Shown one piece after another: positions 17,848-43,237 of a stretch of DNA of 43,407 bases (its first letter is position 1; each line of letters opens with the position of its first letter). The stretch lies in the NCBI GenBank assembly GCA_000388065.2, contig KB932203.1; one strand, written 5' to 3'. The notes below the pieces were generated by a model, which had not been told where the DNA came from, ran no database searches, and saw only the letters and a list, made by a program, of their open reading frames with translations. A program made the position numbers and the translations under genes. Source of the DNA: Fonticula alba ATCC 38817 (taxonomy: Eukaryota; Protista; Nucleariida).

Positions 17848-18080
17848 ATGACCTCCGGCGCGACATTCCCCCTCCATGTGACCCGACCGGATGAGCAGGG
17901 CCTCTACCGCCTGCCGGCCGTGGGCACCACCCCATACGATGCGCTGACCTCCCTGGTGTCGTGGCGCCCGGTGCGCGTCCGCCCACCGACCGACCTGTCC
18001 TCCTACGATGCGCCGTATCCCGGGGACAACCACTTGGTCCGTCTGGGCACCGTCACTCCTGCCCCTCCTTCCTTTTCTCC

Positions 18081-18149
<69 letters not shown>

Positions 18150-21100
18150 AATGGGGTCACCCGTCCTACTTCACAGGGGCGTGCCTGCGGGCACCAGTGG
18201 CGCTGGGGTGGCCGGGGAGGGCGGGGCCCCCCCGGAGAGAAAGGCATCAAGGCGCAGACCCCACCGGTGCGCGCACTCCCCCCCCCTCCCCCCCTTCCCC
18301 CCCCCCCCCCCCCCCCCGCGCCCCTCGCCCGCGTGCCCGCCGCTCGTCCCCTGTGAATGCCTTGCCACCTGACACCCAGATGTGTTGCATACGCGTGCAC
18401 CTGTGCGGGCCTCAGTTCATCATCCATGTCCAGCCTGAGCAGGCGCCCTTCCCTCACACGGACTGCGACCCGGCAGTTGGGGCATTCACCGTCCTGCATG
18501 TGGACCCGAATACCGGCCGGCCGGAGCGCATCCCGGCGCCAAGCCACTCGACCGGGTGTCCGCTTGGTGGCCAGACGGCCGAGGCGAGCGCCCCCGTCAC
18601 CGGGCCCTGCTTCCTGTGTGTGGCTCTGGCCACCGGGCCGCGGTCCGGGCCGAGGACCACCCAGTCGGGCCAGTCGCTTGTCGAAGAGGAAGAGCAGGCC
18701 CTCCTCTGGGTGCGGGCTAGCTGCCTGGCCTTGCAATATCAATACGCGCGGGCGGACTTCCCGACACTGCTCCAGTACCCGGAGGTGGCCACGCTGCTTG
18801 GTGTGGGCGATTTGCTGGCCTCCGCCCCAGGGGCGGATCCCGACCAAAGTTGCACCCTCTGGCAGCTGTTCACCCTGTCCCTGCGGCTGAAGTTCTCAAT
18901 CAAGCGGGTGTTCGCCGTTCTCGGGCTCTTCACTTCGGCCAGCATCTTTCCCCAGCCGGACATTGGTGTGCCGCTGGCCATGGCCCATGTGCTGGTGGCC
19001 ATCAAGGTGCGTTCCCTGGTCCTCGCCACGGAGCGCGGGTATCTCCCGGGCCCTGCTGGTGGTCGTGTGTGTGTGTGTGTGTGCGGGGGGGGGGNNNNNN
19101 NNNNNNNNNNNNNNNNNNNNNNNNNNNNNNNNNNNNNNNGGGGGCGAGAGGAGGGACACAGACCAGGCACACCCCGCGAAGGATGACCGACTCTCACACG
19201 GTGCCTTCTTGCCCATCCTCGGTGCGCATGCGTCGCTCTGCGCAGGTGAGCCGGCTGGCCACCCTGCCCACCGGGCACCCCATCTACCAGGTGAACGATT
19301 CCATGTGGATTTCGGTGCGTCCACTTGATCGTGGCTCGGAGCGCTCCCTCGCCAGGTGACTCACCCCCTGCCCTCACCGGCAATGCAGATCCCCCTGTCA
19401 ACCATCCCGCCGGGTGCCTACTCGGAGCTTGAGGCCGAGAAGCTCATGCAGCGCCGCATTGCCCAGCGACACTACTACTGCCACGGCGTGGACTTGACAA
19501 CGTATGTGGTCCTCTTCGCCTCCTTCTTTTTCCCATCTCCTCCTCCTTCCCCCTTTAACGCCCACATGTCTGCCACTGCCCCTGGGGCTTTCGCCCTCTC
19601 GCGCGCAGTCCCTTTCCTCCGACGCCGACCGGCGCCGGCCGGCGCCCCTGCCGCAATCCGGGCTTCCGAGCGAACCACCTGCTGTCGGGCCCCTTCGCCA
19701 TGGCCGGCGCGCCAGAGGTGTGTGTCGCCCTCATCCGCGGCACGGTCAACCTCCGCCAGGAAACAATCAGGGCGCAGGGCCCCGCCGAGGAGGCGGCATC
19801 AGGCCTGCGGCCCGCACTGGAGCACATCACCTTGCTGGTGCTGACCCGGCTGGCGGATGACCTTTTGGCCAAGGCCCTTCCCTTGTCCTGTGGCTTGCTG
19901 CTGTCGCGATCCTCCCCGACCACCTTTGTCAAGTCGCTGCTGACCGCCGGGCCCGGTGGGCATCCAGGCGCCGGGGGTATGGCTGGCAATGGGGCGCATG
20001 CCGCCGGCATTGGTGTGCATCCTGGCCCGGGCTTGGCGACGGATGCCAACGCCTCGCCGCAGATGGCTGGCTTCATTGGCCTCCGGCGGTCGAGCCAGTT
20101 CCAGACACTCTCGGGGGCCGGATCGGCCAGCACGCCGGCCGGCAGCCCGGGGCTCATCCCCGGCAGCCCGGCGCCGGGAATGGCCCCCGGCGGCCCCGGG
20201 CCCGATGCCGCGCTTGCTGCCGGACCCGATCGGGCCGACCGCTTTGGCGACATCCAGAGCTCGACGCAATTGTGTGCGCGCGAGGGCGAGGTCCAGGCCA
20301 TTGCCTGGACCGGCCAGTCGCCCCAGCGCCCCGGGCCTGGGGCCTCGATTTCGGACGCGTGCCAGAGGGTGCGCTTCAGTGCCAGTGTCGCGCGTGCAGG
20401 CACCCCGCCGGCGGCCATCCGTCTGGTGCCGAACCAGACCCGCGACCCGCACGAACGCCCGTACCACTTGATCTTGGGGAACCGGGGGTCGGCCGGCTTC
20501 GAGGAGGACTTTCTCCACCTGGAGGTGCCACACAATTTGGCCTCCTCCGGGCCGTCGCTTTCTTCGGACTTCGCCCATGCCTTGGCCTACTTCTCCCTCC
20601 TGTCGACCGAGACGCTGGGGGCCTTTTCATCGGATCGGCGCCAGGAGGTCATCCTCCTGGACGTGGCATACCAGTATGATCTGTCGTACCTGGTGCGTGT
20701 GGCTGCTGCTGCTGCTGCTGCGGCCGCCTGGCTTGCCCCAATTGTCCGGGGGGAGATTCGCATGTTCGCTCTTTCTCCGCCTTTCCTCGTCTCCCCTGTC
20801 GCTGCCATGCCCTAACTGTGTGTGTCCCATTCCCGGGTGCAGCTCAAGAGCCTTTGTCGCATGGCCCGGTCCTCGCGCAGCCTGCCCATCCTGTCACACT
20901 TCAGCCGCGAGGAGTACCACCTCCAACAGATGGACCAGGCGTCGTATGCGCGGCGCATGACCCACGGTGTGCTGAACGTCCCGGGCTTGGCGCCCGGACG
21001 CTCGGGCCCTGCCAGCCCGGCGGCCACGGTCGAACGCATCATCAGTCGCCAGCAGACGGTCATGCGCCTGGCCCACCTGACCCCCTTCCCGCCGCTGGCC

Positions 21101-24100
21101 GATGCCCTTCGGCACTCATTCATGCTGGACGCAGCGGCCGAGCATTTGTTGTCTCCGGCAGCGGCGGCCGGCGGCCTGATGGCCAGGGCCCTGTGCGACA
21201 CCATGGAGGGGTTCGTCCATGCGCTGGCCTCGGCCATCCGGTCGCCCTCTTTGCGCAACAAAGTCCCCTGCGTGCGGGGGAGTGAGGCGGTTGTTGGGCG
21301 CTTTTTCCTGGCCCAAACGCCGCTGCGGTCGCCCGGTGAGGATGACATGGAGGAAGACCCGGCGACCGCCGGCGGTCCTGGCCGAGCTCCGGGACCCGCG
21401 GCCGCGCAGCTGTCTCTCCCCCAGGCCACCCTGGCCGAGGAGGCCGCCGGGCCACTCCGGCGACCGGGTCGGCGCCAAATGGCCGGGGCCGGGGCCCGGT
21501 CCCCGCTGGGACCCGGCATGGAGAAGCCCGCCGATACTCCGCCCACGCGGGCGTGCCCGCCACCGGGTCTGCCCCTGGTACCGGGCGCCCGGCGTGGCCT
21601 CGGCAGTGGGCAGATTGCCGAGCAGGAACCCCCAGCGGGGATGGAGGCCGACGATGATGTGGGCCCGGATGACTTCGACGATGACGATGACGATGAAGAT
21701 GCCGGTGCTGTGGATGACGAGGAAGATGCCACCGGCCACCGGGGTCCGGGCCGTACGCCGGCCAGCGTCGATGCGCGAGTCAGCCATCCGGCCTCCAGTC
21801 TGCTGCCCAGCCCGCCGGAGGTGAGGGCCGCGTGGCGGTCCGACGGGGCCGGGCCCTTGATGGCGGCCATGAGCCCCGACAACACACGGGCCGACTGGCC
21901 AGCGGCGCTGAGCGGGTCGGGCACGCCGCTGCCGGCGGCTTCGGCCCTGGTTCGGGGCCTGGCCCCGCACGGGACCGTCGCCATGCCGGTCAGCCAGCCC
22001 GGCATCACCGAATATGACTTCGACAACCAGCATGTCCAGAGTTCGGACGACGAGCCGGCAGACTGGGGCTTCGCCGACATCGAAGGCCATCTGCAGCAAA
22101 TGCATGCGGCCCTGGAGGGCGAGCAGTCTCAGCGTCTGGTGGCCTTCGCTCCGGAATTGGGCCTGGGCGCGGCCGTGTCCAAGCGCCCGGCCACCGGGGC
22201 CGGGGGCGCACTTCCCGGCAGCGGGTCACACCCGCGCATGGTTCCCCTGCTGCCTGTGCCGCTGCTGGTGGAGGAGCCCACTTCCGGGGGCCAGTGTCCC
22301 TTTGCCGTGGAGATGGGCTTTGCCCCGCCGCTGGGTGCTCTGCCGGCCATTCGGCGCCTTGTGGATCTGACTTCGCCCCAAGCCCCGGTGGACTGGTTCA
22401 CTTGGGATCGGCCGGCTCTGGCGCTGACCTTTGCCATCATGGCGCCCCTGTGTCGGCCACTGCGCCTGAATTTGGTCCTGCCGGCCGATGGCCGGGGCGC
22501 CCCGCGGCGCCTGGATGTTCTGGTGTCCGAGACCCTCGGGTCCCGGGCTGCCTGGCGAGTGATCTGCGACCGGGTGCCCCTCGCGGCCCCGGACTGCTCG
22601 GTCGAGTCGGAGTCCGACCAGGAGTCCGGCCGGCCGCGCGCACCGGATGCCTCGTCCGCTGACAGTGGGTACCTGCTGGTGAGCCGGTGCCGGAAGCACC
22701 GGGCCGGGCCGGGGGCTCGCGTGGCCCGGGGCGGCTCGCCACGCCTGGCCACCCTCAATGGCATGAGCATGGCCACCCCCTCTCCGAGCCTGGTGCTGGC
22801 CCCCGGGCGGTCGCCACTATTGGCCATCGCCGATCCGGAGGACGACCCCAGCCTGAGCGGCCTGGCCCAGGGGCTTGGCCCGGGCGGGGACTTCCATCGG
22901 GTCACCTCGCTGGAGGCACGCGAAGCCCTGCAGAGCGTCGACCGGCGGGGTGACAATGATGGCGATGACCGAGGCCATGCCGGGCATGGCATGGCGGAAG
23001 AGGAGGCGGAGGCGGAGGAGGAGGAGTGCTCCGGCTGCTCCAGCCAGTCCGAGGGCGAGGGCGAGGAGGACGACCTGCCGGACCCCGCGCGGGGCGATGA
23101 CCCCCGGCGTGGGGCCAGCTTCCGCAGCCTCGGCCAGACGGACAGCGGCCTGGCCGGGCCCTCGGTCTCCCGACGGGGGTCCATGCGGTATTCCTCGCGT
23201 CGTGCGTCGGCCTACTGTCACCGGGACTGCCATGGGGCCGAGAGTGAAACCCAGGCCGCGAGCCTGCATCCGGACCCACATGGAGATGACCCCCACGGCC
23301 GCCCGGAGTCGCAGGCGCTGCCATTGCAGCCACACCAGCAACAGCAGTACATCGAGCTGAGCTTCGACCTGGTGGACATGCACCAGGCCGGGCGGCCGAC
23401 TGGGCTGAGCCACATGTTCGCCGGGTCCAACTTCGGTGCCGGGTCGGCCACCGACACCGACTCGGATGCGGACACCGCCGCCGGCACGAACCCGACCGAC
23501 GGGTCCTCCACCGTGGGCGGGTCTGCTTGGCTGACGGGGCGCGGGTCAGGCCGGCGTCTCCCCCGGGCACGCTTCCTGCGCATTGTCCTGTACCGGGATG
23601 ACTTTGTGGATGCCGAGTCGGCGGCGGTGATGGGGCCGGCCTTCGGTGTGGGAAGTGCGGCTCTTTGCCACCGCCCGGGGCCGATGCGCCTCGGCCGGGT
23701 GTCGCTGCTGGCCGATGTGCCGGACGCGGCCCGGCAGCAGGCACGCCTGGTCGGGTGGCGTGGCCACCTGCGCGAGCGCCTGGTGGATGGGGCCCTGGCT
23801 GCGGCGCAGGGCCGCCTCTTGGCCGCGGTCTTCGGCACACCCGGGCCCGATGGCAAGTCGCGGGAAGACCGGTCGGGCAACACCCCGGCCGAGGCGCAGA
23901 CCCTGCCGGGCGACCAGCTGGTGCTTGGCGCCCCGGATTCCGATGCCCCGACCCCGGAGCAGCAGCTCCGGCGCTACTGTGCCCTGCTTCGCGAGAGTCT
24001 GGAGAGGCATGAGCCGGAGCTCCGCCGACGCGGGGTGCCCCGGCCAGTTGGCATCGGCCGGCGCCGGCGAGCTCCCTGCCCGCGGGCGGCCATCCTCCGG

Positions 24101-26611
24101 CGCTTGGTGCAGATGGACACCGCCCTGCACTTTGAGGAGACCAGCATCTACCAGAAGCTGGATCCCCTGGCCCGGCGGCGGCTGGTGGCCACGGCTGCGC
24201 ACTGGCTGACAATGGAGCTGCTGCTGGCCCAGTGTGCGGTGGCCACGGTCCCGTCACCGATGCCGGCGTGGTGGCAGCCGGCCGGCATTCGCGAGGCACT
24301 GGACCCGGCGCGCGTGCGTCATCTCCATAGCCCCTTGCGCCTGGCCGCCGGCATCACCGCCGGCATAAGCCCCGACGACGGGGGCGGCCCCGGTGTTGCG
24401 GTGTGCTGTGCGTGTGGGAGCCGTCTGCCTCCGGGGCCCGTCACCGGCCCTGCCGCCACCGCTGCCAATGTTGGCGTCGGCGTCGGCGGGCTGGTCCCCT
24501 CGCCTGAGGGCCGGCCAATTTGCCTCCTACGCGGGCCCCTTCCCGCGGGGAATGGGCTTGCCTGTGGCGCCTGCCAGTCGCTGCTGCAGCGGCAGAAGAC
24601 CCACACCGAATCGATCGGCCTGATCCAATCCTCCATGCCAATGTTGACGCACGACCGGGAGAGCGCGGATGCGGCGGCCGGGCGGCGCCTGTGCCGCGTG
24701 GCCGCGGTTGCCAGCAGCCCGGCTGCGATGCCGCTCTTTGCGGCGGCCTGCCTCGGCGGGAGTCGGCTGTCACGCGCGCCGGATGACCTGACAATCAAGT
24801 CGGGCGGCCCGAATGCCATGACAACCGGGGGCCTGGCCGCTTTGAGCCCGAACGCCGGGGCGTGCATCCCCCTGCGTAGCCCCCTGCTGACGGACTCGCC
24901 CCTGATGGACTGCCTGGGATCCCAGCACACTGGCCACACGGCCGAGCTGTCGGACCTCAGTCAAGCCGGGGGGTTGGCCGTTCCGCTGGACGCGGTCCTG
25001 GCGCCCTGGTGCCGGGAGGCCGACCGGGCGGACATGGCCCCAGGCCGGCGCCTGGATTGGGCTGCCACGCCACCGATTCGCCACCTGTGGGTTCCCCACG
25101 GCCGGGAGTCCACCGTGGCCGTGGTCCTGGCGCATGGACTGACTGCCGGATGCCCGGCGCGGCTGCGCCTGTGTCTGGCCACCGTGCCGGGCCTCCTGGC
25201 GCCCGGTTGCCCAGCCGTGGAGCTGACCTTGTCGGCCTGGCTGGCCGATCCGCTGGCCTCGGCCGGTGACAGCCAGCCGGTCCCCCTGGCGCTGAATGTC
25301 CTGCGACGCCTGGTCCCGGGTGCTGCGGACATGGTCAACACCGACCCGCATGGTGGCCGGGGGCTGACCCTCGGGTGGGTGGATGTTCCCCTGACTCGGG
25401 AGCCGGGGCCCGTGGCTCCGGGCAGTGTGTTGATCTTCCGCCTGGTGCTTGACCAGCCGGCCGCGCAGGGGCTCCTTGGTGTGGCGGACCTTTTGATCGA
25501 GCAAGACTCCCCCGAGGCGGATGATGACGAGGAGGCCGCGCACTTGGTTCCGGCTGGCAGCGAGCCCGATTCGCCGGTTGTGCTGTCTGCGGCCGAGGTG
25601 GCGGCGGCCGTGGTGGCCGACCAGGCGTCGATCGTGACCCGGGCAGCTGGGCGGCCCCGGTGCCGGCTTCTCACCCGGCGGGTGCCGCTGCGTCCGTGCT
25701 CGGAGGCTGCGCGCCGCCTTGCCACGCCGCAGGCCGGGCGCCTGGTGCTGGTGTTGACATCGCTGGCGAGCTTTGGCGCGCCGGCCGGCGGCTCGGCGGC
25801 TCTGGCGGATCTGCTGGAAACCGAGGCCTCCGGCCATGGCCCTCTCGGACATTTGGAGGCTGGGCAGTCGGGGGTTGCCGGTGCCGCGGTCCCGGGAACC
25901 GGGGCTCCGGTCGCCGGGGCTCCGACCCCTGCTGCCCACCCCACCGGGCAGTCCTTCCTGTCGCGGATTTTCTCGCGATCTGCCCCGGCGTCCGGTGGCG
26001 AGCCGGCCGGGTCGGAGCGCGGCGGTGCCCCCCCGCCCGACGGGGCCCCTGGCGATGCGGTGGCGTCGCATGTGATGGGCCTCGGCGGGAGCCGGGACTC
26101 CTTGGCGGCGCCGCCGCGCCCGGCCATCGGCCTGCGCCTGCGCGGCATCACCCTGCCCCGGGAGCTGGCTGTACATACGCGTCTTCTGCGCGTGACTTTG
26201 GTGCTGGGCAGTGGCCTGACATGCGTGGTCGGGGAGTTTGCCCTGCCGCTGGTGGCCGTTTCCGGGCGCTCGGCCCTGGAAGATCGCCTGTACCTGTCCC
26301 TGCTGACCCCCCTGCATCCGGAGGGGGTCTTCTTTGCGGAGGGCCGCGGCCCTGGCTCCGGGGCGGCCTTGGTGCTGGAGAGCGCGGACCCCGCCCCGGG
26401 GGTGGCTGCGGCGGTGGCCTGGCGCGATGGCAGCCTGAGCCAGCTCCCCTTCCAAGCCGTGGGTCAGATCATCTACCAGAGCGAGGGGTCGTGGCTTCGG
26501 CAGCTGTCGGCCGATCGGCGGAGTGCCGCGGCCCGGGCAGCCAATGCGGCCGCCGCCGCCGACCAGGGCGACGCCCGGCCCTTCAGTCGGATCCTCAGTT
26601 TCTTCGACTAA
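17848..26611 (+). CDS. SAC9: SAC9-like SAC-domain protein, probably catalytically dead; exons 17848-18036, 18380-19006, 19246-19314, 19389-19501, 19609-20692, 20843-26611 (about 2,600 aa)
   Basis: Spliced segments line up in order with recalled Arabidopsis SAC9 motifs: VLHVDPNTG (IYIDPTTG), LPTGHPIYQVNDSMWISIPL (LPGGGCVYTVAESQWVKIPL), HYYCHGVDLTTPFP (HYFCDTRDITRPFP), FRANHLLSGPFAMAGAPEVCVALIRG (FVWNRWLSVPFKNIGLPEHCVILLQG), RAGTPP (RRGTIP). Splice phases are consistent. Confidence 0.75.
18082..18147 (+). repeat. Poly-C homopolymer (66 nt) in intron 1 of the SAC9-like gene
   Basis: Seen directly. Confidence 0.9.
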
Positions 26612-26895: not shown

Positions 26896-28907
26896 TCAAG
26901 ACAGGTGCACCGTTGGCGAGGCGGCATTGGACGTGAAGGTGACTCCCCACTCGCTGACGGAGTTGTCATACGAGCAGGCGTACAGGCGCTCGGTGGTCGC
27001 GTCAAAGGCGAGGCCGCGCACGACGTTCCGGTGGTGACGGGCGATCTGGCAGATGGACTGGGTGGCCAGGATGACACAGGCGATGTTCCGGTCGTTGGTC
27101 ACGGCGAAAAGCACCTTGCCGGAGGGGTGCCACACGTAGGATGGCATGCCCAGGGGGTCGGTGTCGATGCCATAGATGTTGGCCACCTGCTCGGCCGAGT
27201 GCGCGCGGAAGATGATCAGCCGACTGCGGTCGGTCAGGACACCGAGGTATCCGCCGCAGGGGCTGAACTTGACTGTTGGCCGTGCGTTTTGGTGGGGGGG
27301 GGGAGGGAGGGGGGGGGGGGGGGGNNNNNNNNNNNNNNNNNNNNNNNNNNNNNNNNNNNNNNNNNNNNNNNNNNNNNNNNNNNNNNNNNNNNNNNNNNNN
27401 NNNNNNNNNNNNNNNNNNNNNNNNNNNNNNNNNNNNNNNNNNNNNNNNNNNNNNNNNNNNNNNNNNNNNNNNNNNNNNNNNNNNNNNNNNNNNNNNNNNN
27501 NNNNNNNNNNNNNNNNNNNNNNNNNNNNNNNNNNNNNNNNNNNNNNNNNNNNNNNNNNNNNNNNNNNNNNNNNNNNNNNNNNNNNNNNNNNNNNNNNNNN
27601 NNNNNNNNNNNNNNNNNNNNNNNNNNNNNNNNNNNNNNNNNNNNNNNNNNNNNNNNNNNNNNNNNNNNNNNNNNNNNNNNNNNNNNNNNNNNNNNNNNNN
27701 NNNNNNNNNNNNNNNNNNNNNNNNNNNNNNNNNNNNNNNNNNNNNNNNNNNNNNNNNNNNNNNNNNNNNNNNNNNNNNNNNNNNNNNNNNNNNNNNNNNN
27801 NNNNNNNNNNNNNNNNNNNNNNNNNNNNNNNNNNNNNNNNNNNNNNNNNNNNNNNNNNNNNNNNNNNNNNNNNNNNNNNNNNNNNNNNNNNNNNNNNNNN
27901 NNNNNNNNNNNNNNNNNNNNNNNNNNNNNNNNNNNNNNNNNNNNNNNNNNNNNNNNNNNNNNNNNNNNNNNNNNNNNNNNNNNNNNNNNNNNNNNNNNNN
28001 NNNNNNNNNNNNNNNNNNNNNNNNNNNNNNNNNNNNNNNNNNNNNNNNNNNNNNNNNNNNNNNNNNNNNNNNNNNNNNNNNNNNNNNNNNNNNNNNNNNN
28101 NNNNNNNNNNNNNNNNNNNNNNNNNNNNNNNNNNNNNNGAGAGAGAGAGAGAGAGGGGGGGGGGGTCAGTGAGTGCGAGGCATGCAGTTAGGCTGCGCGC
28201 AGGATGCGGCGCAGTCAACATGGGAGGGGAGGGAAAAGAGCGGGAAAGCGGGGCATCAGGAAGGGGGGGAGGCACGAACAGGCCGCGCGGACGAGGAACT
28301 TCTTGTGGTCGGCCCAGGACTGGGCCACGGCGGAGAACATGTCCGCAGAGGCGTCAATCAGATGGTGCGTGGCATCCATGGAGGTGGAGATGAGCAAATC
28401 CGGCCGGCGGGGGTTGAACACCACTGACAGGACCCCGGCACGGTGGTGGTGGAGGTACTTCTCCGGCAGGCCGGTGGCCAGGTTGGTCAGGATGACCTGC
28501 TGGTCGGCGCCGCCGGTGGCCAGGTAGCGCGGCTGGTCGGGGGTCTGGCTGCCATCCGGGACCGGGGGCTGCACCGCCACGCAGAGGATGTTGTTTCCGT
28601 GGAGGCCGGCCAGGTTCCGGAGGAGGCTGATGCCCGGCACGCCGGCCGGGTGCGGAGCCAGGAAGGCCGCGTCCGCCGGAGAGAGCGACCGAGCGATGGC
28701 CATCTCCGCCAGACCGGCCTCCACGCGGGCCTGCAAGGCGGTGTTCAGCATCTCGACCAGCTGGCCGCCGGGCTGCGTGCGGGCCATGTCCTGGTCGTAG
28801 GCGTCCAGCAGGCCGCCGGTTTCCTCCTCGAAGGCGGCCAGGGTCTGGTGGAGGCCGCGCTCGAAGAGAAACTGCTGCACGAGTCCGAGCACGCGGTTGG
28901 GGTCCAT
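26896..28907 (-). CDS. LisH + WD40-repeat protein; the middle part lies in an assembly gap
   Basis: N-terminal LisH-like VLGLVQQFLFERGLHQTLAAFEEE. WD blades LATGGADQQV, HRAGVLSVVFNP...STSMD, HRNVVRGLAFD...ACSYDNSVSEW. ATG 28907, stop 26896. Confidence 0.85.
27325..28138. other. Assembly gap; other gaps at 19095-19139, 35296-35353, 37005-37516 and 42530-42594
   Basis: Runs of N, each adjoining a G or C run. Exons of the WD40 and DPP4 genes are hidden in these gaps. Confidence 1.
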
Positions 28908-34802: not shown

Positions 34803-36926
34803 GCCGGGCGTGGGGGGCTACTCGCGTGGGTGCAAGGAAAATGTGAAGGGGGGGGGGCGAGCTCAGTGGACCGGGGCCGGGGCCTTTGTGTGCGCACGTA
34901 CACAAACAGCCGCAATCCCACTCTACCCGGCACAAATTCGTACAAGCATACCTGGGCACTTGCTCAAAGGCGCGTGCGCGTGCGCCCTCTTGCCCTCGGC
35001 GCCCCGGGCCAGACCAGGTCTATGCTTTGTCGGGCACACATTCCGACTGGCGCCCTCTCGCACACACATTTCCCTGCAGCCCCCTGCCCTCATGTCCCGC
35101 TTCGGCCGGCCCGGTCGCCCCCTCGGTGGCTGCGTTGCATGAAGGGGGAAAGGTGCGGAGCCGGCGCCGGCGGGGGCCTGCACATGTTGCACCCGTGTTC
35201 GCGCCCGCCAGCGCCAATATCACCGTGGAGCGCCGGCGTCGGCGTGTGGCGCCCGCTCTGGCGCAGGTGCGATGGCCTCCACCCCCCCCCCCCCCNNNNN
35301 NNNNNNNNNNNNNNNNNNNNNNNNNNNNNNNNNNNNNNNNNNNNNNNNNNNNNGGGCCGCTGACTCGCGAATAGGGGAGAATAATACCGCCGGCGGGGGC
35401 GGGCGCCCGAGTGTCGCGAGAGCGCATGCCCCGCCCGTGCCGGTGGCATCCCTCGCTCTTGGCCGAGCGTGGCCTCGGGGGAATTATTGCGGCCCGGCCG
35501 GCCCATGTGTCGTCTGCGTGGGATGCATGCCTGTGTTCGTTCGGCCGGGAGATGAGAGGCGGCGCCTCGGGGGCGGGAGCCTGGGGGAAAAAACAACAAC
35601 AGGAGAGGTGGACCCGGCCGCGAGGCGTGAAAGCCCTGCCGCCTCTCCGGCGCAAGGGCGCGTGTTGGGGCACATATATGTGCGTGCGCACGCGTGGCGA
35701 TCCCCGGCTCCAAGCCCCGCGGCTGGGCCTTCCAATGACTGGAGATTAGATCCGCGATTCGACCCGGACGTGACGACACGCTGGGGCGGCCCAGGTCCGG
35801 GCGGCGGCGGGCCGAGCTGACAAGGCGGCGGTATATCGGCGGCATACAGCCGGGGGGGGGGGGAGGTCCTACCTCCCTGCCCGAGGCACCGGGCACGCGC
35901 GCCCACGGGCGTCGAGTGTGCTGCGCTGGGGGGGGGGGGCGTGCCGGCGCCGCATCCGCGGGCAGCCCCGTCCCTCCCCAGGGGGCGCGGAGGGCGGGGG
36001 GGGGCCTCGACGCCTCTCTTTTGCCGTCCCCGTAGCCGGGAGGCGGGATGGGCCTGCACTTGCGCGGCGGACAGAACTGGTGCGGGCCGAGAGACTGGGC
36101 CTTTCTCACGCGCGCGGTGGGCCGTTTTTGTGGTTTTTTTTTTTTGTTGGGGGTTGTTCTGGCTTCTTCTTTTTCACGCACGCGGATTTCCGTGCCCCCC
36201 CCCCCCCCCCCGCCCCTGCCCCGTGTGGGGGTGGCGTCCTGCTGGTCGGACGCTATTTTGCCGTTGGCTGCCCCTCGCCCGGGTGGGCCGGCACGGGGGG
36301 GGGAGGGGGGGGGGAACGGCAGTGGCACGAGGAAAAGCCGGAGGTCGGCCCGGCTCTGGCGTCGTCCTGTGTTTCGGGCCCGCGCGGGCCTGGAACCGGG
36401 GAGACAACACCTTGGCCGCTCTCGAGGGTCCGAACCACTCTGGGGCGAGGGCCAGGACAAACAGGCCGCCGCGGCCCGGTCCCGGCCCCAGGGGACCTGC
36501 CGAGGAGGGGCCCGAGGCCACCCCCCCCCCCCCCGTCCTCAAGCCCAGGCTGCGGATGGGGAACGTGCGACGCTCTTCCATTGAGTGGGTCCCGGTGCGT
36601 GCGGCGGGGGCGATGCTTGGGGGGTGGGGCCTCTCGCGGGCCCTCGGCCTGTCTGTGGGAGGGCGGCGTGCGCGCGTGCGTGTGCGCGTGCGTGTGTTTG
36701 CGTCAGCCCCCCGAAGAGGCGGCCCGCCAGCCGGTCGCGCCCTCCTCGTCCGGGTTTCATAACCGAGTGAGCCCCGGGTTTGAGAAACGGTCGCGATCAC
36801 TGATCTCGTCCTTCCTCCCCCTACTACCGCCGCACCACCGCCCCCTTTCCCCCTCTCCCCCTCCCCGCCTCCGTTGCCCCGCCGCCTCCCCCCTCCCGAG
36901 CCCGCCGCGCACCGCTCCCCCTCGTC

Positions 36927-39900
36927 ATGGCGTCCACCTACGGCGGCGTCGACGACGACCAGGCCGGCCTGATCCAGCACACGGATACTGAGGCTGGCTT
37001 CCCCNNNNNNNNNNNNNNNNNNNNNNNNNNNNNNNNNNNNNNNNNNNNNNNNNNNNNNNNNNNNNNNNNNNNNNNNNNNNNNNNNNNNNNNNNNNNNNNN
37101 NNNNNNNNNNNNNNNNNNNNNNNNNNNNNNNNNNNNNNNNNNNNNNNNNNNNNNNNNNNNNNNNNNNNNNNNNNNNNNNNNNNNNNNNNNNNNNNNNNNN
37201 NNNNNNNNNNNNNNNNNNNNNNNNNNNNNNNNNNNNNNNNNNNNNNNNNNNNNNNNNNNNNNNNNNNNNNNNNNNNNNNNNNNNNNNNNNNNNNNNNNNN
37301 NNNNNNNNNNNNNNNNNNNNNNNNNNNNNNNNNNNNNNNNNNNNNNNNNNNNNNNNNNNNNNNNNNNNNNNNNNNNNNNNNNNNNNNNNNNNNNNNNNNN
37401 NNNNNNNNNNNNNNNNNNNNNNNNNNNNNNNNNNNNNNNNNNNNNNNNNNNNNNNNNNNNNNNNNNNNNNNNNNNNNNNNNNNNNNNNNNNNNNNNNNNN
37501 NNNNNNNNNNNNNNNCCCCCCCCTCCCCGCCCGTCCCCAGAGTCCTCCTCCTACGGCACCGAGTTCGGCTTCAATGACATCTTCAACTCCACCTTCCAGC
37601 CGGTGACCACCTCGGTCCGCTGGGTGTCCGGCAGTGTGTCCACTCACCGTGACGCCTCCGGCAACATCATGCTGACCCGCTTCCCGACTGTCGAGCCCGA
37701 GGTTTTCCTCGAGGCCGCCTCCGTCATCAACGTGCGTCTTCCTCCGGCTTTCTTGCCGTCTCTCGCTCTCGCTCTCCCCATGTGTTTCCCCCCCCCCCCC
37801 CCCTCCTCCCACTCTCCTTCCCCTCCACTGACCCCCGCGCCCTTGCGCATCATGCACCCAGCCCGACACCAACGAGCCCCTGAGCTTCTTCAACTACTGG
37901 ATCTCCCCGGACGAGCAGTTCGTCCTGCTGGCCACCGAGCGTGTCGGCGTCTGGCGCCACTCCTTCACCGCCTTCTACTTCGTGCACTCCATGGTCGATG
38001 GCACCACGCGTAAGCTGGATGCCGAGCGCCTGCAGCACGTCTCCTGGGCCCCGACCGGGCACCGCCTGGTTTTCGTCAAGGGCAACGACATCTTCCTGCT
38101 GAAGGATGTGTCCGGGAACCTGAGCGACACCGATCGCGTGACTCACGATGGCAGCCTCAACATCCTCAACGGTGTGCCCAGCTGGGTGTACGAGGAGCAG
38201 GTCTTCGGCCATGCGCACTCCATCTGGTGGAATACCGACGGGACCCAGTTCGCCTTCATGCGCTCCGATGAGACCGACGTGCCGACCTTCCACCTGACTC
38301 GCTACGGCAACACCGACTACCCGTCCCACACGCCGGTCAAGTACCCGAAGGTCGGCTACCCGAACCCGATCGTCCAGATGAGCATCATGGACGTCGACTC
38401 CGGCACCATTGCCAATGTGGACTTCGAGCGTGATGACGAGTTCATCATCGTCGATGTGGCCTGGTCCAACCCGGCTCGCATGGTTGTCCGTGTGACCGAC
38501 CGCATCCAGACCCAGGCCGACCTGTACACCGTGTCGCACGAGCGCCCGACCGCGCAGCAGATCTCCTCCCAGGCCCGGGCCAAGGGTTGGGTCGACTACT
38601 TCTCCATCCTCACGGTCCCGGCCACCGATGCCGCGGCCGAGCGCTACGTCGACATCATCGAGGTCAATGGGTACAACCATCTGGCCCTCTTCTCCTTCGA
38701 CAGCCCGAAGCCCGTGCGCCACCTGACCTCCGGCGAGTGGGAGGTCACCGCCTATGCGGCCTTCGACCCGGAGACCGGCACCATCTTCTACTTCAGCACG
38801 GAGAACGGGGCCATCGAGCGCAACCTCTACTCCGTCAACCTGGACGCCTCCATTCCCAAGCGCCACATCACCGCCGAGCAGCCCGGCTGGTACACGGCCT
38901 CCTTCAGCCCGGATGCCAAGTTCTACCTGCTGAACTACCGCGGCCCGTCGGTTCCCACCCAGCATATCTACTCGACCGCCGACCCGGCCTTCCGCCATGT
39001 GGTCCAGGAGAACCGCGCCCTGGCGGAGCTCCTGTCCACGTATGCCATGCCGCAGGTGCACTACACCAAGCTGCGCATCGGGGACTACGATCTGGATGTG
39101 TCCCTCACCGCGCCGGCCGGCTTCGACTTCAACAGCTCCAAGAAGCACCCGATGCTGCTGCATGTGTATGGTGGCCCCGACTCGCAGATGGTCACCCGGG
39201 AGTTCCCGGCCAACGACTGGCACACCTACCTGGTGTCCTCGCTGGGGTACATCATTGTCCGGGCTGACGCTCGCGGCACTCGTGGCCGTGGCAATGTCTT
39301 CAAGAACTCCGTCTACCTGAACCTCGGTGACTATGAGGTGGCCGACCAGATTGCCGTTGCCGAGCACTTCTCCAAGGCCCGCTACGTTGACCCGAAGCGT
39401 GTCTTTGTTTGGGGCTGGTCCTATGGCGGTTACATGACCTCCAAGATCCTGGAGCGTGATGCCGGCTCCATCATCCGCAAGGGTGTTGCCGTGGCCCCGG
39501 TCACCGACTGGCGCTTCTATGGTGCGTTTCCCCTTGGCTTTTCATTTGTGCCTGTTGTGTCTTCTTGGTGTTGTCCTTCTGTTTTCTTCCCTCCCTCTCT
39601 CCCCCTATCTTTCGCCTCCTTGCACACACACACACACACATGCACACGCACGCACACGCACGCACAGCCTGACACCCAACCTTTTCTCGGCCCCTCTCCC
39701 TCCCAGACACCATCTACACCGAGCGCTTCATGTCCACCCCGCAGCTGAACGGCGAGAAGTACAAGTCCTCGGCCCTGACCAAGTTCGACTCGTTCAAGAA
39801 CGTCGACTACTTCCTCATCCATGGCACTGATGATGACAATGTCCACTTCCAGCAGGCCGTCGTCTTCTCCAACAACCTGACCCAGGCGTCGGTCCGTTTC

Positions 39901-40816: not shown

Positions 40817-43237
40817 TTAGGCGGACACGCTGACCACTTCCGAGCCATCGTTGGAGGTGATGCGGGCGCTGACCGAGCCGGCGCGGTCAACCGACAGGAG
40901 AAGGTTGACCTCCGGGCCAGCCGAGGCGGGGATCATGATGTCGAGAGCGGAGGTGTTCTCGGCGGCGGTCTCGGAGTCGCCGGCTGTGCAGATGCGAGAA
41001 GGGGGGAGGGAGAGAGACAGGGAGTCAGCACAGGCGCGGGGAGGGATGACCAACAGGCTATCGCATGGGGAGAGCATGTGACGGAGAGCAAAAAAATACC
41101 CCCCCCCCCAGGGGGTCGGCCAACACACAGGTACCCCCACCCCCACCAAAGTACGCACCAACAATCGACAGGATGCTGGCCTTGTCGTCGCCGGCCACCT
41201 CGCAGGTGACAGAGATGGCCACAGGGACGGCAGTGCCGGCCGGCAGGAGCGGGACGAACTTGCCATCGGCGCCAGCCAGGCCGACAGCCTTGGTCAGGGC
41301 GCGCAGCTCGTTGTCAGCGCAGACGGTGGGCAGCTCGGGGAGCGGCTCGTCGGCGGCCGGCTTCAGCTGGTCAAACAGGTGGAAGGCATGGAGGGCAGCA
41401 CCACGGGCCACGGTCTCCTGGGGGTTGTTCTGCTCGCGAATGACGGGGACGCCCTCGCCGAAGAGCTCGGAGAACTTGCGCTGGACCAGGGGGATGGCCG
41501 AGCCACCACCGGTGAGGATCACACGCTGGATGGACTTCAGGGGGATGTTGCTCACGGTGAGGAAGCTGTCCACCGAGTTGAGGAGGGACTGGATCATGGG
41601 GGCTACGCGGTGGGTGGGGGGGTGATGATGATGAAACGAGGACGCGCACGTGGAAGAGAGGTTAGTTTGGCCGGCGCAGGGAGACATACACACAAAAGGG
41701 GACACACACGCATGTGTGACACTCCCCCCCCCCCCCCTTCCTCCCCGGTGGTTGCCCTTGCTGCACACTTCGACCGGAGGGTGGTGGGTTGACGCACTGA
41801 TCAGGACCTCGAAGTGAGAGCGGGACATGTTGGAGCCGGCGAAGTCCATGCCGTCATGGAGAGACTCCACGAAGACCGGGGCGGTGGTCGACTGGGAGAG
41901 GGTGCGCTTGATGCGCTCGCACTCCATGCGCAGCTTGATCATGGCGCGGCGGTTGTCGCTGATGTCGGCCAGCTTGCGGGAGATGTCGCGCAGGAGGTGG
42001 TTGGCCAGGAGGTCGTCCAGAGCGCGGGCGCCGGTGGCGGTGTCGACCTTGGAAGCGACAATCTGCATTCGTACGCGCGCGTGTGCGTGTGCGTGTGCGT
42101 GTATGTGCACGGTGGTATCCGAGAGGAGGGGAGGGGGGGGGGGAGAGGCTTAGTCCATGTCGCGGAGCGAGGGGGGTGGCGAGGGAAAGACGCCGGGGGC
42201 CCACACCCGGCCATGCAATGCAAGCAGACGCACCTCGAAGGTCTCGCCAACATAGCGGCGCAGGACAGTGGTGCTGACGGACGAGCCGCCGAAGTCGAAG
42301 ACCAGGATGTTCTCCGGCTCGGCGGACACCAGGGGCTCCTCGTCCAGGAGGGCCAGAGCCGCGGCGGCGGGCTCGCTAATCAGGGCGCTGAGCTTGAGGC
42401 CACACTTGTCGGCGGCCGAGCGAATGGCGGCCAGCTGGACCTCGGTCAGGTTGGTGGGGACAGACAGGACCGCCTCGCGAACGATGGAGCTCAGGATGCC
42501 TGGCAGGCCGGGCAGGGGGGGGGGGGGGGNNNNNNNNNNNNNNNNNNNNNNNNNNNNNNNNNNNNNNNNNNNNNNNNNNNNNNNNNNNNNNNNNGGGGGC
42601 GGCTGGAGAGGATGCGGGCGTGTGTACCCTCGGCAGTGCCCTTGAGACCGCCGATCAGGGCGGCCAGCAACTCGGTCGGGGTGACCAGCTGGGTCTCCTC
42701 GAGGTGCTCCAGGTTCAGCTCGACGGCGATGCGCGACGGGTCATCAGCGGTCGGGGCGCGCTCGGTGATGGAGAAGGGCCACTTCTGCAGGGACTTGGCC
42801 TTCTGAGCGCCCTCCGGGTCGTCCATGAAGGCCAGGAGGCGCATGACCTCCGGGATGGTGTGCTGCATGTTGCGCAGGAACTGGCGCTGGGCCGTGGTGC
42901 CGAGGATGACCTCGGTCTCGGGCTTGGCGGGCTCCTCGTCGGCCGGGGTGTCCTCCTCGGTCTCCTCGACATAGCGCGTGGTGTAGGCCACCCAGGCGGG
43001 GGTGGCGCGCTCGCCGTCCTCGTTGACGATGACCTCGGCGCCGTTGTTCCGGTGCAGGGCAATGGTGACGAAGTCGTTACCCAGGGCCAGGCCAACCGGG
43101 GTGGTGGAGATGACCGGGGTGGCCGGGACCTCCGGGACAACAGGCTCCGGGGCGACGACCGGGGCAGCGACCGGGGCGGCAGCCGCCGCACCGGAGGCCT
43201 TCTTGGACTTACCGACGTTCTTACGCTTGGGGGGCAT
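40817..43237 (-). CDS. HSPA14: Atypical Hsp70 of HSPA14/Ssz1 type (ribosome-associated complex subunit); about 5 exons
   Basis: Hsp70 NBD motifs: GLALGND, NEDGERATPAWVAY, SEPAAAALA, VFDFGG, KLRMECERIKRTLS, ILTGGGSAIP, PQETVARGAA. The substrate-binding domain is short, with no helical lid and no EEVD. Confidence 0.8.

What the first reader, a model, noticed from the sequence alone, without database searches (positions are those of the whole stretch)
21041..21100. SAC9-like protein lacks the catalytic CX5R loop: candidate phosphoinositide pseudophosphatase
SAC phosphatases need CX5R(T/S); plant SAC9 has HQNGVIRFNCADSLDRTN. The positionally equivalent segment here is RQQTVMRLAHLTPFPPLA, with Cys replaced by His and Arg by Pro. 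The N-terminal SAC scaffold and the long SAC9-type C-terminal region are still retained in an intact ORF of about 2,600 aa. Retention suggests a non-catalytic role such as lipid or membrane scaffold, or regulator of an active SAC partner. I know of no described SAC9-type pseudophosphatase. The alignment is from memory.
Basis: partly seen in the sequence, partly recalled or inferred. Interest (0 to 1): 0.8.

Follow-up and report, generated by a model that had tools for sequence, protein, structure and literature searches.

The report
Dead-enzyme SAC9 relative in Fonticula
This slime-mould-like relative of fungi expresses a huge, very fast-evolving relative of the plant lipid phosphatase SAC9 whose active-site loop has lost both essential residues, so it probably acts as a non-enzymatic scaffold rather than an enzyme.

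Summary
Bases 21041-21100 (+) encode ISRQQTVMRLAHLTPFPPLA, residues 749-768 of Fonticula alba H696_02226. This is a 2604-aa protein from a six-exon gene (17848-26611) that is expressed and spliced.

- **Family.** Pfam and PDB sequence searches find nothing. An exhaustive phmmer search and profile comparisons show clear SAC9-type homology for residues 224-375 (hhalign 97.9%, E 3e-13).
- **Weaker remnants.** Colinear, shuffle-tested traces follow: the GNEVE/RRGTxP motifs, a Cys cluster and the SAC9 C-terminal domain.
- **Catalytic loop.** Three different SAC9 profiles each place IISRQQTVMRLA on the strand just before the catalytic Cys. His760 therefore sits where the Cys should be. The Arg position is Pro766, or His773 if LTPFPPL is an insertion.
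- **No rescue motif.** There is no C-x5-R between residues 423 and 1869. The only C-x5-R-S (415) lies upstream of those remnants.
- **Contrast with the family.** 185 of 186 SAC9-family proteins retrieved keep C-x-DS[LM]DR[TS].
- **Rate.** The Fonticula branch is about 11 times the family median, yet the coding frame has no stop in 1922 codons.

It is a credible SAC9-type pseudophosphatase. Dead SAC domains are already known (yeast Inp51), and one Anaeramoeba SAC9 paralogue has also lost the Arg. I class it as a new variant of a known kind. Its function is untested.

The parts
17848..26611 (+). Gene H696_02226 (Fonticula alba). The CDS has six exons: 17848-18035, 18415-19004, 19244-19313, 19388-19501, 19609-20691, 20842-26611. 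It encodes 2604 aa.
   Evidence: The protein is 100% identical to the big exon. All five GT..AG introns appear as joints in RNA contigs. Joining these exons reproduces P0001 exactly, with GC3 0.75-0.86 against GC2 0.48-0.67 along the whole CDS. The coding frame of the last exon has 0 stops; the other five frames have 8-42.
18025..18631 (+). Weak match to the start of the SacN subdomain (residues 60-135; VLHVDPNTGRP against the SAC9 consensus VDPTTG). It spans intron 1.
   Evidence: Second hhalign hit, colinear with the first but not significant alone (E 0.15).
18896..19771 (+). Well-conserved SAC9-type core (residues 224-375). It covers the end of SacN and the first strands of the catalytic subdomain, including the motifs LPTGHPIYQV, HYYCHGVDLTTPFP and CVALIRG. 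It spans introns 2-4.
   Evidence: phmmer E down to 5e-9. Custom SAC9 HMM 90.9 bits. hhalign 97.5% and 97.9%. This is the only part AF2 models with confidence. The top structural matches are Sac1 and Fig4.
19095..19139 (.). Assembly gap of 45 N, inside intron 2.
   Evidence: N run located. An RNA joint 19004->19244 skips it. The spliced product fits the family consensus across the junction.
19889..19912 (+). CGLLLSRS (residues 415-422), the only C-x5-R-[ST] string in the protein. It is not the P-loop.
   Evidence: Regex scan. It lies upstream of the GNEVE and RRGTxP remnants, which precede the P-loop in every SAC9. Its score against the P-loop block is no better than shuffles.
20276..20425 (+). 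Remnants of two catalytic-subdomain motifs. AREGEVQAIAWT (544-555) matches GNEVECEQLVW. FSASVARAGTPPAAIRL (577-593) matches yvWRRGTiPiWW.
   Evidence: Each is the best ungapped PSSM match in the whole protein, with p 0.002 and 0.02. The joint chain was reached by 0 of 5000 shuffles. hhalign E 0.003 against one profile.
20534..20857 (+). Weak colinear remnants: NLASS..SLSSDFAHALAYF (630-650) against NLLR..LsehFqeS, and QYDLSYLLKS (676-687) against NfDWH..K. The second spans intron 5.
   Evidence: hhalign posterior 0.4-0.5 in the full-length alignment only. Not significant alone.
21041..21076 (+). Strand leading into the P-loop, ISRQQTVMRLAH (749-760). The His760 codon (21074-21076) is at the catalytic Cys position.
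   Evidence: This is the best local hit of residues 700-800 in three SAC9 profiles, always on the columns just before the Cys.
21077..21118 (+). P-loop equivalent. It reads LTPFPPL (761-767, a Pro-rich insertion or the degenerate loop itself) followed by ADALRHS (768-774, pairing with ADSLDRT). The Arg position is Pro766 or His773.
   Evidence: hhalign MAC alignment and MAFFT. Posterior is low here (0.2-0.3), so the register inside the loop is uncertain.
22382..22606 (+). Possible first GBDL domain (residues 1196-1270).
   Evidence: Posterior reaches 0.9 in the full-length hhalign alignment, but the domain-level test is not significant (z 1.5). Atlas features point weakly to galactose-binding-like folds.
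24398..24625 (+). Cys cluster (residues 1868-1943; CCxC ... CxxC) at the place of the SAC9 C8D or FYVE zinc module.
   Evidence: Domain test z 4.4, 0 of 24 shuffles. These are the only stretches with pLDDT above 80 in the C-terminal AF2 model.
26114..26329 (+). SAC9 C-terminal-domain remnant (residues 2440-2511; AIGLRL.., VVGEFALPLV).
   Evidence: hhalign posterior up to 0.9. Segment E 0.039 at the colinear place. Domain test z 6.3, 0 of 24 shuffles.

Best explanation
H696_02226 is a very divergent Fonticula alba member of the SAC9 family of SAC-domain phosphoinositide phosphatases, and it has lost its active site. Shown: the first half of the SAC domain is clearly SAC9-like. The rest of the architecture survives as faint, colinear remnants: catalytic-subdomain motifs, a Cys cluster and the C-terminal domain. 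His760 occupies the catalytic Cys position, the Arg is missing, and no other C-x5-R sits where a P-loop could be. Also shown: the gene is transcribed and correctly spliced, and it keeps a 7.8-kb reading frame with coding-type base composition. Inferred: the protein cannot carry out cysteine-based phosphoinositide hydrolysis. It is kept for a non-catalytic job, most likely as an adaptor or scaffold that uses the conserved SacN-proximal surface (residues 224-375) and the C-terminal module to bind partners or membranes. This would resemble dead myotubularins, or the scaffold role of Fig4.
For: - Family: phmmer hits are all SAC9-type. HMM 90.9 bits. hhalign 97.5% and 97.9%. Sac1 and Fig4 are the only strong structural matches.
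- Colinear remnants: the GNEVE and RRGTxP blocks are each the best match in the whole protein, and the joint chain was reached by 0 of 5000 shuffles. C-terminal domain z 6.3, Cys cluster z 4.4.
- Loop: three profiles place IISRQQTVMRLA on the pre-Cys strand. No C-x5-R lies between residues 423 and 1869.
- Family contrast: 185 of 186 SAC9-family proteins of at least 1000 aa keep the motif.
- Real gene: spliced RNA contigs; GC3 well above GC2 throughout; 0 stops against 8-42 in the other frames.
- Changed constraint: terminal branch 4.85 against a median of 0.44 substitutions per site, even in the best-conserved region.
- Cys is needed in plants: SAC9 C459A does not rescue the sac9 mutant (PMC9436410).
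Against: - Pfam and PDB sequence searches see no SAC domain at all.
- HMMER cannot align the catalytic half.
- AF2 is below pLDDT 60 for the catalytic half and 36 on average for the C-terminus. No structural model shows the loop.
- Each profile match at the pre-loop strand is weak alone (E 0.04-0.28).
- No orthologue was found, so purifying selection (dN/dS) could not be measured.
- No activity, binding or localisation data exist.
- Whether Fonticula has active SAC paralogues was not established.
Confidence: 0.75

Rival explanations
1. Relic gene. The protein has no function and is drifting. The loss of the loop is part of general decay rather than a change of role.
For: The terminal branch is about 11 times the family median. 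Most of the protein is low-complexity, rich in A, G, P and S, and cannot be modelled. No close orthologue appears among 1.8 billion representative proteins.
Against: The coding frame has 0 stops in 1922 codons, while the other five frames of the same DNA have 8-42 stops and a longest open run of 612. Coding-type GC3/GC2 asymmetry runs along the whole CDS. All five introns are correctly spliced in RNA. Residues 224-375 still score 91 bits. After this much divergence, a neutral sequence would not stay open.
Confidence: 0.1
2. Still an enzyme. Catalysis uses a non-canonical site, such as C415-x5-R421-S422 or C687 with Arg at +7, or His760 as nucleophile.
For: CGLLLSRS fits the CX5R(S/T) regex, and AF2 predicts a strand followed by a helix around it. 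The P-loop block PSSM has its best match within residues 372-900 there, although the score is at shuffle level.
Against: Residue 415 precedes the GNEVE and RRGTxP remnants, which always come before the P-loop, so it is not colinear with the P-loop. About 0.4 such strings are expected by chance in a protein of this size and composition (my estimate). It more plausibly corresponds to the l-I-s-R-R-S strand, which is inference only. C687 has the wrong spacing. The other conserved pocket motifs are also degenerate.
Confidence: 0.06
3. Artefact. An assembly gap or a wrong gene model hides the real catalytic exon.
For: A 45-N gap lies inside the SAC-coding region at 19095-19139. The genome is a draft.
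Against: The gap lies in an intron that RNA contigs splice out, and the junction fits the family consensus. A single RNA contig runs without differences from 19609 to 21569 across the loop region. The pre-loop strand is present, so the loop position is in the assembled sequence.
Confidence: 0.03
4. Not SAC9. It is a divergent member of another SAC subfamily (Sac1, Fig4 or synaptojanin-like) with an unrelated long tail.
For: No Pfam SAC9_GBDL, SAC9_C or WW hit. The GBDL domain tests are not significant.
Against: Every hit that reaches the loop has the SAC9-type C[AGV]DSLDRT, and the long ones carry SAC9-specific domains. The C-terminal domain and the Cys cluster match at colinear places.
Confidence: 0.06

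Closest known systems
SAC9 family: Arabidopsis SAC9 and the 'SAC9-like' proteins of Thecamonas trahens, Naegleria, Planoprotostelium, Acrasis and Anaeramoeba
   Same: The SAC9-type signature is present in the first half of the SAC domain. The order of the remnants is the same: catalytic motifs, pre-loop strand, Cys cluster, C-terminal domain.
   Different: The loop NCADSLDRTN, kept in 185 of 186 members examined, is replaced by AH-LTPFPPL-ADALRHS. The protein is about 1000-1250 aa longer because of low-complexity inserts. No WW domain or Pfam-detectable GBDL domain is found. The terminal branch is about 11 times the median.
Anaeramoeba ignava 'sac9-related' paralogue KAJ5070607.1 (P0022)
   Same: It is a SAC9-type protein with a degenerate P-loop: CFDSLEIT, with Arg replaced by Ile.
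   Different: It keeps the Cys and has Pfam-detectable Syja_N, GBDL and FYVE domains. Paralogues with an intact loop exist in the same species. No intact SAC9 was seen for Fonticula.
SAC domain of yeast Inp51/Sjl1
   Same: It is a SAC domain without CX5R(T/S) and is considered inactive (PMC11244165).
   Different: In Inp51 the dead SAC domain is fused to an active 5-phosphatase domain. Here no other catalytic domain is detectable.
Dead myotubularins (MTMR5, MTMR9-13)
   Same: They are CX5R lipid-phosphatase homologues with the Cys and Arg substituted. They are retained as regulators or adaptors of active paralogues (PMC4133831).
   Different: They belong to a different phosphatase family and are well folded and well conserved. 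An active partner for the Fonticula protein is not known.
Fig4/Sac3 in the PIKfyve-Vac14 complex
   Same: It is a SAC-domain protein with a scaffold role beside catalysis (PMC7525815, listed). It is a structural match of the model (7K1W).
   Different: Fig4 keeps its catalytic loop.

Membership tests
SAC-domain (Syja_N) proteins | Recognisable SAC fold or sequence (SacN plus catalytic subdomain) | tested here: met
   There is no Pfam hit. However, phmmer hits are all Syja_N proteins, hhalign gives 97.9%, and Sac1 and Fig4 are the only strong structural matches (E 1e-5, Z 8.5-10.8). Only residues 224-375 are confidently alignable.
SAC-domain (Syja_N) proteins | Catalytic CX5R(T/S) P-loop | tested here: not met
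   His760 is at the Cys position, and Pro766 or His773 at the Arg position. No C-x5-R lies between residues 423 and 1869.
SAC9 family | SAC9-type sequence signature in the SAC domain (LPGGH.VYTV.ES.WIKI, HYYCET.D.TRPFPS, FVWN..L..PF...GL..CV.LLQG) | tested here: met
   90.9-bit match to a SAC9-only HMM. All hits that reach the loop are C[AGV]DSLDRT-type.
SAC9 family | First and second GBDL (galactose-binding-domain-like) domains | tested here: inconclusive
   No Pfam hit. High posterior appears in the full-length hhalign alignment, but the domain tests give z 1.5 and 2.2. AF2 is uninformative. The Atlas gives only a weak lead to galactose-binding-like folds.
SAC9 family | Zinc or Cys module (C8D in plants, FYVE in many protists) between the GBDL domains | tested here: inconclusive
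   A Cys cluster at 1868-1943 aligns at the colinear place (z 4.4) and reaches pLDDT above 80. It has only six Cys and gives no Pfam hit.
SAC9 family | SAC9 C-terminal domain | tested here: met
   Residues 2441-2488 match the family's C-terminal columns: E 0.039 as the top hit at the colinear place, and z 6.3 with 0 of 24 shuffles. It is weak and below Pfam detection.
SAC9 family | WW domain after the SAC domain (plant-type members) | tested here: not met
   No WW hit. Named non-plant members such as Thecamonas P0174 also lack it, so it does not define the wider family.
Pseudophosphatases (functional class) | No catalytic activity, yet a retained biological function | not testable with these tools
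   Only indirect evidence is available: the motif is lost, and the gene is expressed with a maintained ORF.

The most novel reading that the evidence does not exclude
Fonticula's only SAC9-type gene is a dedicated non-catalytic scaffold. It would show that the ancient, pan-eukaryotic SAC9 family has a conserved function, carried by the SacN-proximal surface and the C-terminal domain, that does not need phosphatase activity. The same change of role may have begun independently in an Anaeramoeba paralogue.
Probability: 0.3. Interest if true: 0.6.

Novelty: new variant of a known kind. Interest (0 to 1): 0.45.

Why it matters
SAC9 is treated in the plant literature as a plant-specific PI(4,5)P2 phosphatase whose catalytic Cys is essential (PMC9436410). 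The searches here show that the family occurs across eukaryotes: Thecamonas, heteroloboseans, Amoebozoa, Anaeramoeba and a diplonemid. Its loop NCADSLDRTN is almost invariant. A member that has lost the loop, yet is still expressed and kept open over 7.8 kb, is a natural separation-of-function allele. It points to the parts of SAC9 that may work without catalysis, namely residues 224-375 and the C-terminal module. It would also add the SAC9 branch to the lipid-phosphatase families with dead members, beside the myotubularins and Inp51. The practical value is limited: the organism is hard to manipulate, no orthologues are available, and most of the protein cannot be modelled.

Tried and rejected
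- Pfam on ORF pieces, on the whole protein and on nine sub-regions at E up to 10 gave no relevant family.
- phmmer against PDB sequences gave nothing.
- A word-indexed homologue search with the big exon found only the protein itself.
- Atlas features for residues 1-900 gave low-recognition PAZ and DUF4708 hits, which I treated as noise.
- Glocal hmmalign, a sub-HMM of the catalytic half and seven block HMMs gave no usable alignment.
Only the strand part of that block matches.
- hhalign of 220-aa tiles against a plant-dominated profile gave nothing significant in the C-terminus. Signal appeared only with a diverse protist profile.
- AF2 of residues 50-830 is confident only for 219-389. AF2 of residues 1800-2604 has mean pLDDT 36. 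The loop could therefore not be inspected in a model, and no per-residue superposition on Sac1 was available.
- C415-x5-R-S as the P-loop was rejected because it is not colinear.
- Names of 27 of the 28 phmmer hits were looked up (all but P0019, a plant SAC9-type sequence). None is from Fonticula, though many are unnamed metagenome fragments.
- A word search of earlier notes for SAC paralogues in this genome found nothing.
- Literature searches found no paper on a SAC9 pseudophosphatase.
Full report
**What is at the coordinates**

The window is GC-rich eukaryotic DNA. Bases 21041-21100 lie in a 5.8-kb open exon on the + strand. In frame they read ISRQQTVMRLAHLTPFPPLA.

A homologue search with that exon returned one protein at 100% identity: hypothetical protein H696_02226 of Fonticula alba, 2604 aa, with no precomputed Pfam domain.

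**Gene model and expression**

RNA contigs from four runs of one study show five GT..AG joints: 18035/18415, 19004/19244, 19313/19388, 19501/19609 and 20691/20842. One contig runs from 19609 to 21569 without any differing letter. Joining the six exons from an ATG at 17848 reproduces the annotated protein exactly.

The 45-N assembly gap at 19095-19139 lies inside intron 2. The spliced junctions fit the family consensus.

GC3 is 0.75-0.86 and GC2 is 0.48-0.67 in every 200-codon block. The coding frame of the last exon has no stop in 1922 codons. The other five frames have 8-42 stops and a longest open run of 612. The gene is therefore real, transcribed and kept open.

**Is it a SAC9-type protein?**

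Standard searches see nothing. Pfam at E up to 10 on the whole protein and on many pieces gave no SAC hit. phmmer against PDB sequences gave nothing.

An exhaustive phmmer search of residues 1-1000 against 1.8 billion representatives gave 28 hits (E 5e-9 to 1e-3), all on residues about 250-375.
- All ten hits scanned with Pfam carry Syja_N. The longer ones also carry WW, SAC9_GBDL_1st, SAC9_GBDL_2nd, SAC9_C8D or SAC9_C.
- All 14 hits that reach the loop have C[AGV]DSLDRT, the SAC9 form of the motif.
- A SAC9-only HMM matches residues 224-375 at 90.9 bits.
- hhalign against a plant-dominated profile gives 97.5%.
- A profile collected independently of this protein, starting from an Anaeramoeba SAC9-type query, gives 97.9% and E 3e-13.

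AF2 with a SAC9 alignment is confident only for residues 219-389. The only strong structural matches of that model are yeast Sac1 and Fig4, with Foldseek E about 1e-5 and VIA Z 8.5-10.8. This is not independent evidence, because the alignment given to AF2 was made of SAC9 domains.

**The rest of the architecture**

HMMER cannot align the catalytic half. Ungapped block profiles do find two remnants.
- AREGEVQAIAWT (544-555) is the best match in the whole protein to GNEVECEQLVW (p 0.002).
- FSASVARAGTPPAAIRL (577-593) is the best match to yvWRRGTiPiWW (p 0.02).
- None of 5000 shuffles reached their joint, correctly ordered score.

With the diverse protist profile, hhalign gives one colinear alignment over residues 140-2514. 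Posterior peaks sit on family motifs.

Domain-by-domain tests against locally shuffled sequence gave the following:

| Domain | z | Shuffles reaching the score |
|---|---|---|
| C-terminal domain | 6.3 | 0 of 24 |
| Cys cluster | 4.4 | 0 of 24 |
| GBDL 1 | 1.5 | 2 of 24 |
| GBDL 2 | 2.2 | 1 of 24 |

AF2 of residues 1800-2604 is uninformative (mean pLDDT 36), apart from the two Cys-bearing stretches. The SAC9-type tail is therefore only partly supported.

**The catalytic loop**

Residues 700-800 were compared on their own with three SAC9 profiles: diverse protists, mostly plants, and the phmmer hits plus eight plant sequences. The best local match was always IISRQQTVMRLA against l.S.QnGViRfN, the strand that ends just before the catalytic Cys. 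E values were 0.04-0.28, and the diverse-profile match scored above all 12 shuffled and the reversed control.

Inside the loop the register is uncertain. Ungapped, the Arg column falls on Pro766. hhalign and MAFFT instead treat LTPFPPL as a seven-residue insertion and pair ADALRHS with ADSLDRT, which puts His773 on the Arg column. Both readings lack Cys and Arg.

The protein has six C-x5-R strings, and none lies between residues 423 and 1869. The only C-x5-R-S (CGLLLSRS, 415-422) lies upstream of the GNEVE and RRGTxP remnants, which precede the P-loop in every SAC9. It does not score above shuffles against the loop block.

Among 186 SAC9-family proteins of at least 1000 aa collected here, 185 keep C-x-DS[LM]DR[TS].

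**Rate of evolution**

A maximum-likelihood tree of the best-conserved region gives the Fonticula protein a terminal branch of 4.85 substitutions per site. The family median is 0.44. Its placement within the family is therefore unreliable.

**Interpretation**

The cysteine-based mechanism of SAC and other CX5R phosphatases needs the Cys nucleophile and the Arg of the loop (established knowledge). In Arabidopsis, SAC9 C459A does not rescue the mutant (PMC9436410).

Here the whole pocket is degenerate, not only the loop. RRGTiPiWW has become RAGTPPAAI, NLLR has become NLAS, and NfDWH has become QYDLS. Loss of phosphatase activity is therefore very likely.

Retention of a 7.8-kb frame, expression, and a 150-residue island of strong conservation argue for a surviving non-catalytic function. 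I infer an adaptor or scaffold role that uses that island and the C-terminal module. This is by analogy with dead myotubularins (PMC4133831) and with the scaffold role of Fig4 (PMC7525815). The function is not shown.

**Comparison with what is known**

Dead SAC domains are already described: yeast and Candida Inp51 lack CX5R(T/S) (PMC11244165). No paper pairing SAC9 with 'pseudophosphatase' was found.

SAC9 is called plant-specific in the plant literature. The searches here returned SAC9-type proteins named from Thecamonas, Naegleria, Willaertia, Acrasis, Planoprotostelium, Anaeramoeba and Lacrimia.

One Anaeramoeba ignava paralogue has CFDSLEIT, with the Arg lost. It is a second natural case of a degenerate SAC9 loop.

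No Fonticula paralogue appeared among the named phmmer hits. The genome itself could not be searched for active SAC enzymes.

**Earlier notes of this scan**

A note on the same gene (s1-066743, SAC9-type architecture in an opisthokont) agrees with what I found. Another note named the organism, and one search confirmed it.

**Verdict**

It is a new variant of a known kind. Interest is moderate.

Noticed in passing
P0022 (Anaeramoeba ignava KAJ5070607.1), residues 447-459: This is a SAC9-type protein with Pfam-detectable Syja_N, GBDL and FYVE domains. Its loop reads CFDSLEIT, with Arg replaced by Ile. It is the only one of 186 family members retrieved that lacks the motif, and its branch is about 3 times the median.
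   Followed up: partly
P0174, P0169, P0175-P0177, P0182, P0165-P0171 (proteins): Proteins with Syja_N plus SAC9 GBDL domains occur in Thecamonas, Planoprotostelium, Naegleria, Willaertia, Acrasis and Anaeramoeba, many with a FYVE finger instead of the plant C8D/WW. The plant literature calls SAC9 plant-specific (PMC9436410).
   Followed up: partly
P0013 (Lacrimia lanifica transcript, 1503 aa): This SAC9-type protein has a PTEN-like phosphatase module (CKAGKGRT at 622) and a PTEN C2 domain. They lie between the end of the Pfam Syja_N match (432) and the SAC loop CVDSLDRT (943). It is either a nested two-phosphatase fusion or a chimeric transcript assembly.
   Followed up: no
P0167 (Anaeramoeba flamelloides, 1925 aa) and P0172 (1567 aa): These SAC9-type proteins are fused to other modules according to precomputed Pfam domains. 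P0167 carries a metallophosphatase/PP1-type Ser/Thr phosphatase (PF00149, PF16891). P0172 carries a calponin-homology domain (PF00307).
   Followed up: no
window 18067-18158 and 18278-18317 (intron 1 of the gene): These are long C-rich tracts that would read as poly-proline in frame, but they are spliced out in RNA. The bin 18270-18403 shows a summed contig word depth of about 2100-2500, which comes from short low-complexity poly-C contigs and is probably not real expression.
   Followed up: no
window 27325-28138, 35296-35353, 37005-37515, 42530-42594: There are four further runs of N (65 to 814 bases) downstream of the gene. GC falls to 0.46 and 0.52 in the two 2-kb bins that hold the two longest runs (814 and 511 bases). 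The dips are probably caused by the gaps rather than by real composition.
   Followed up: no
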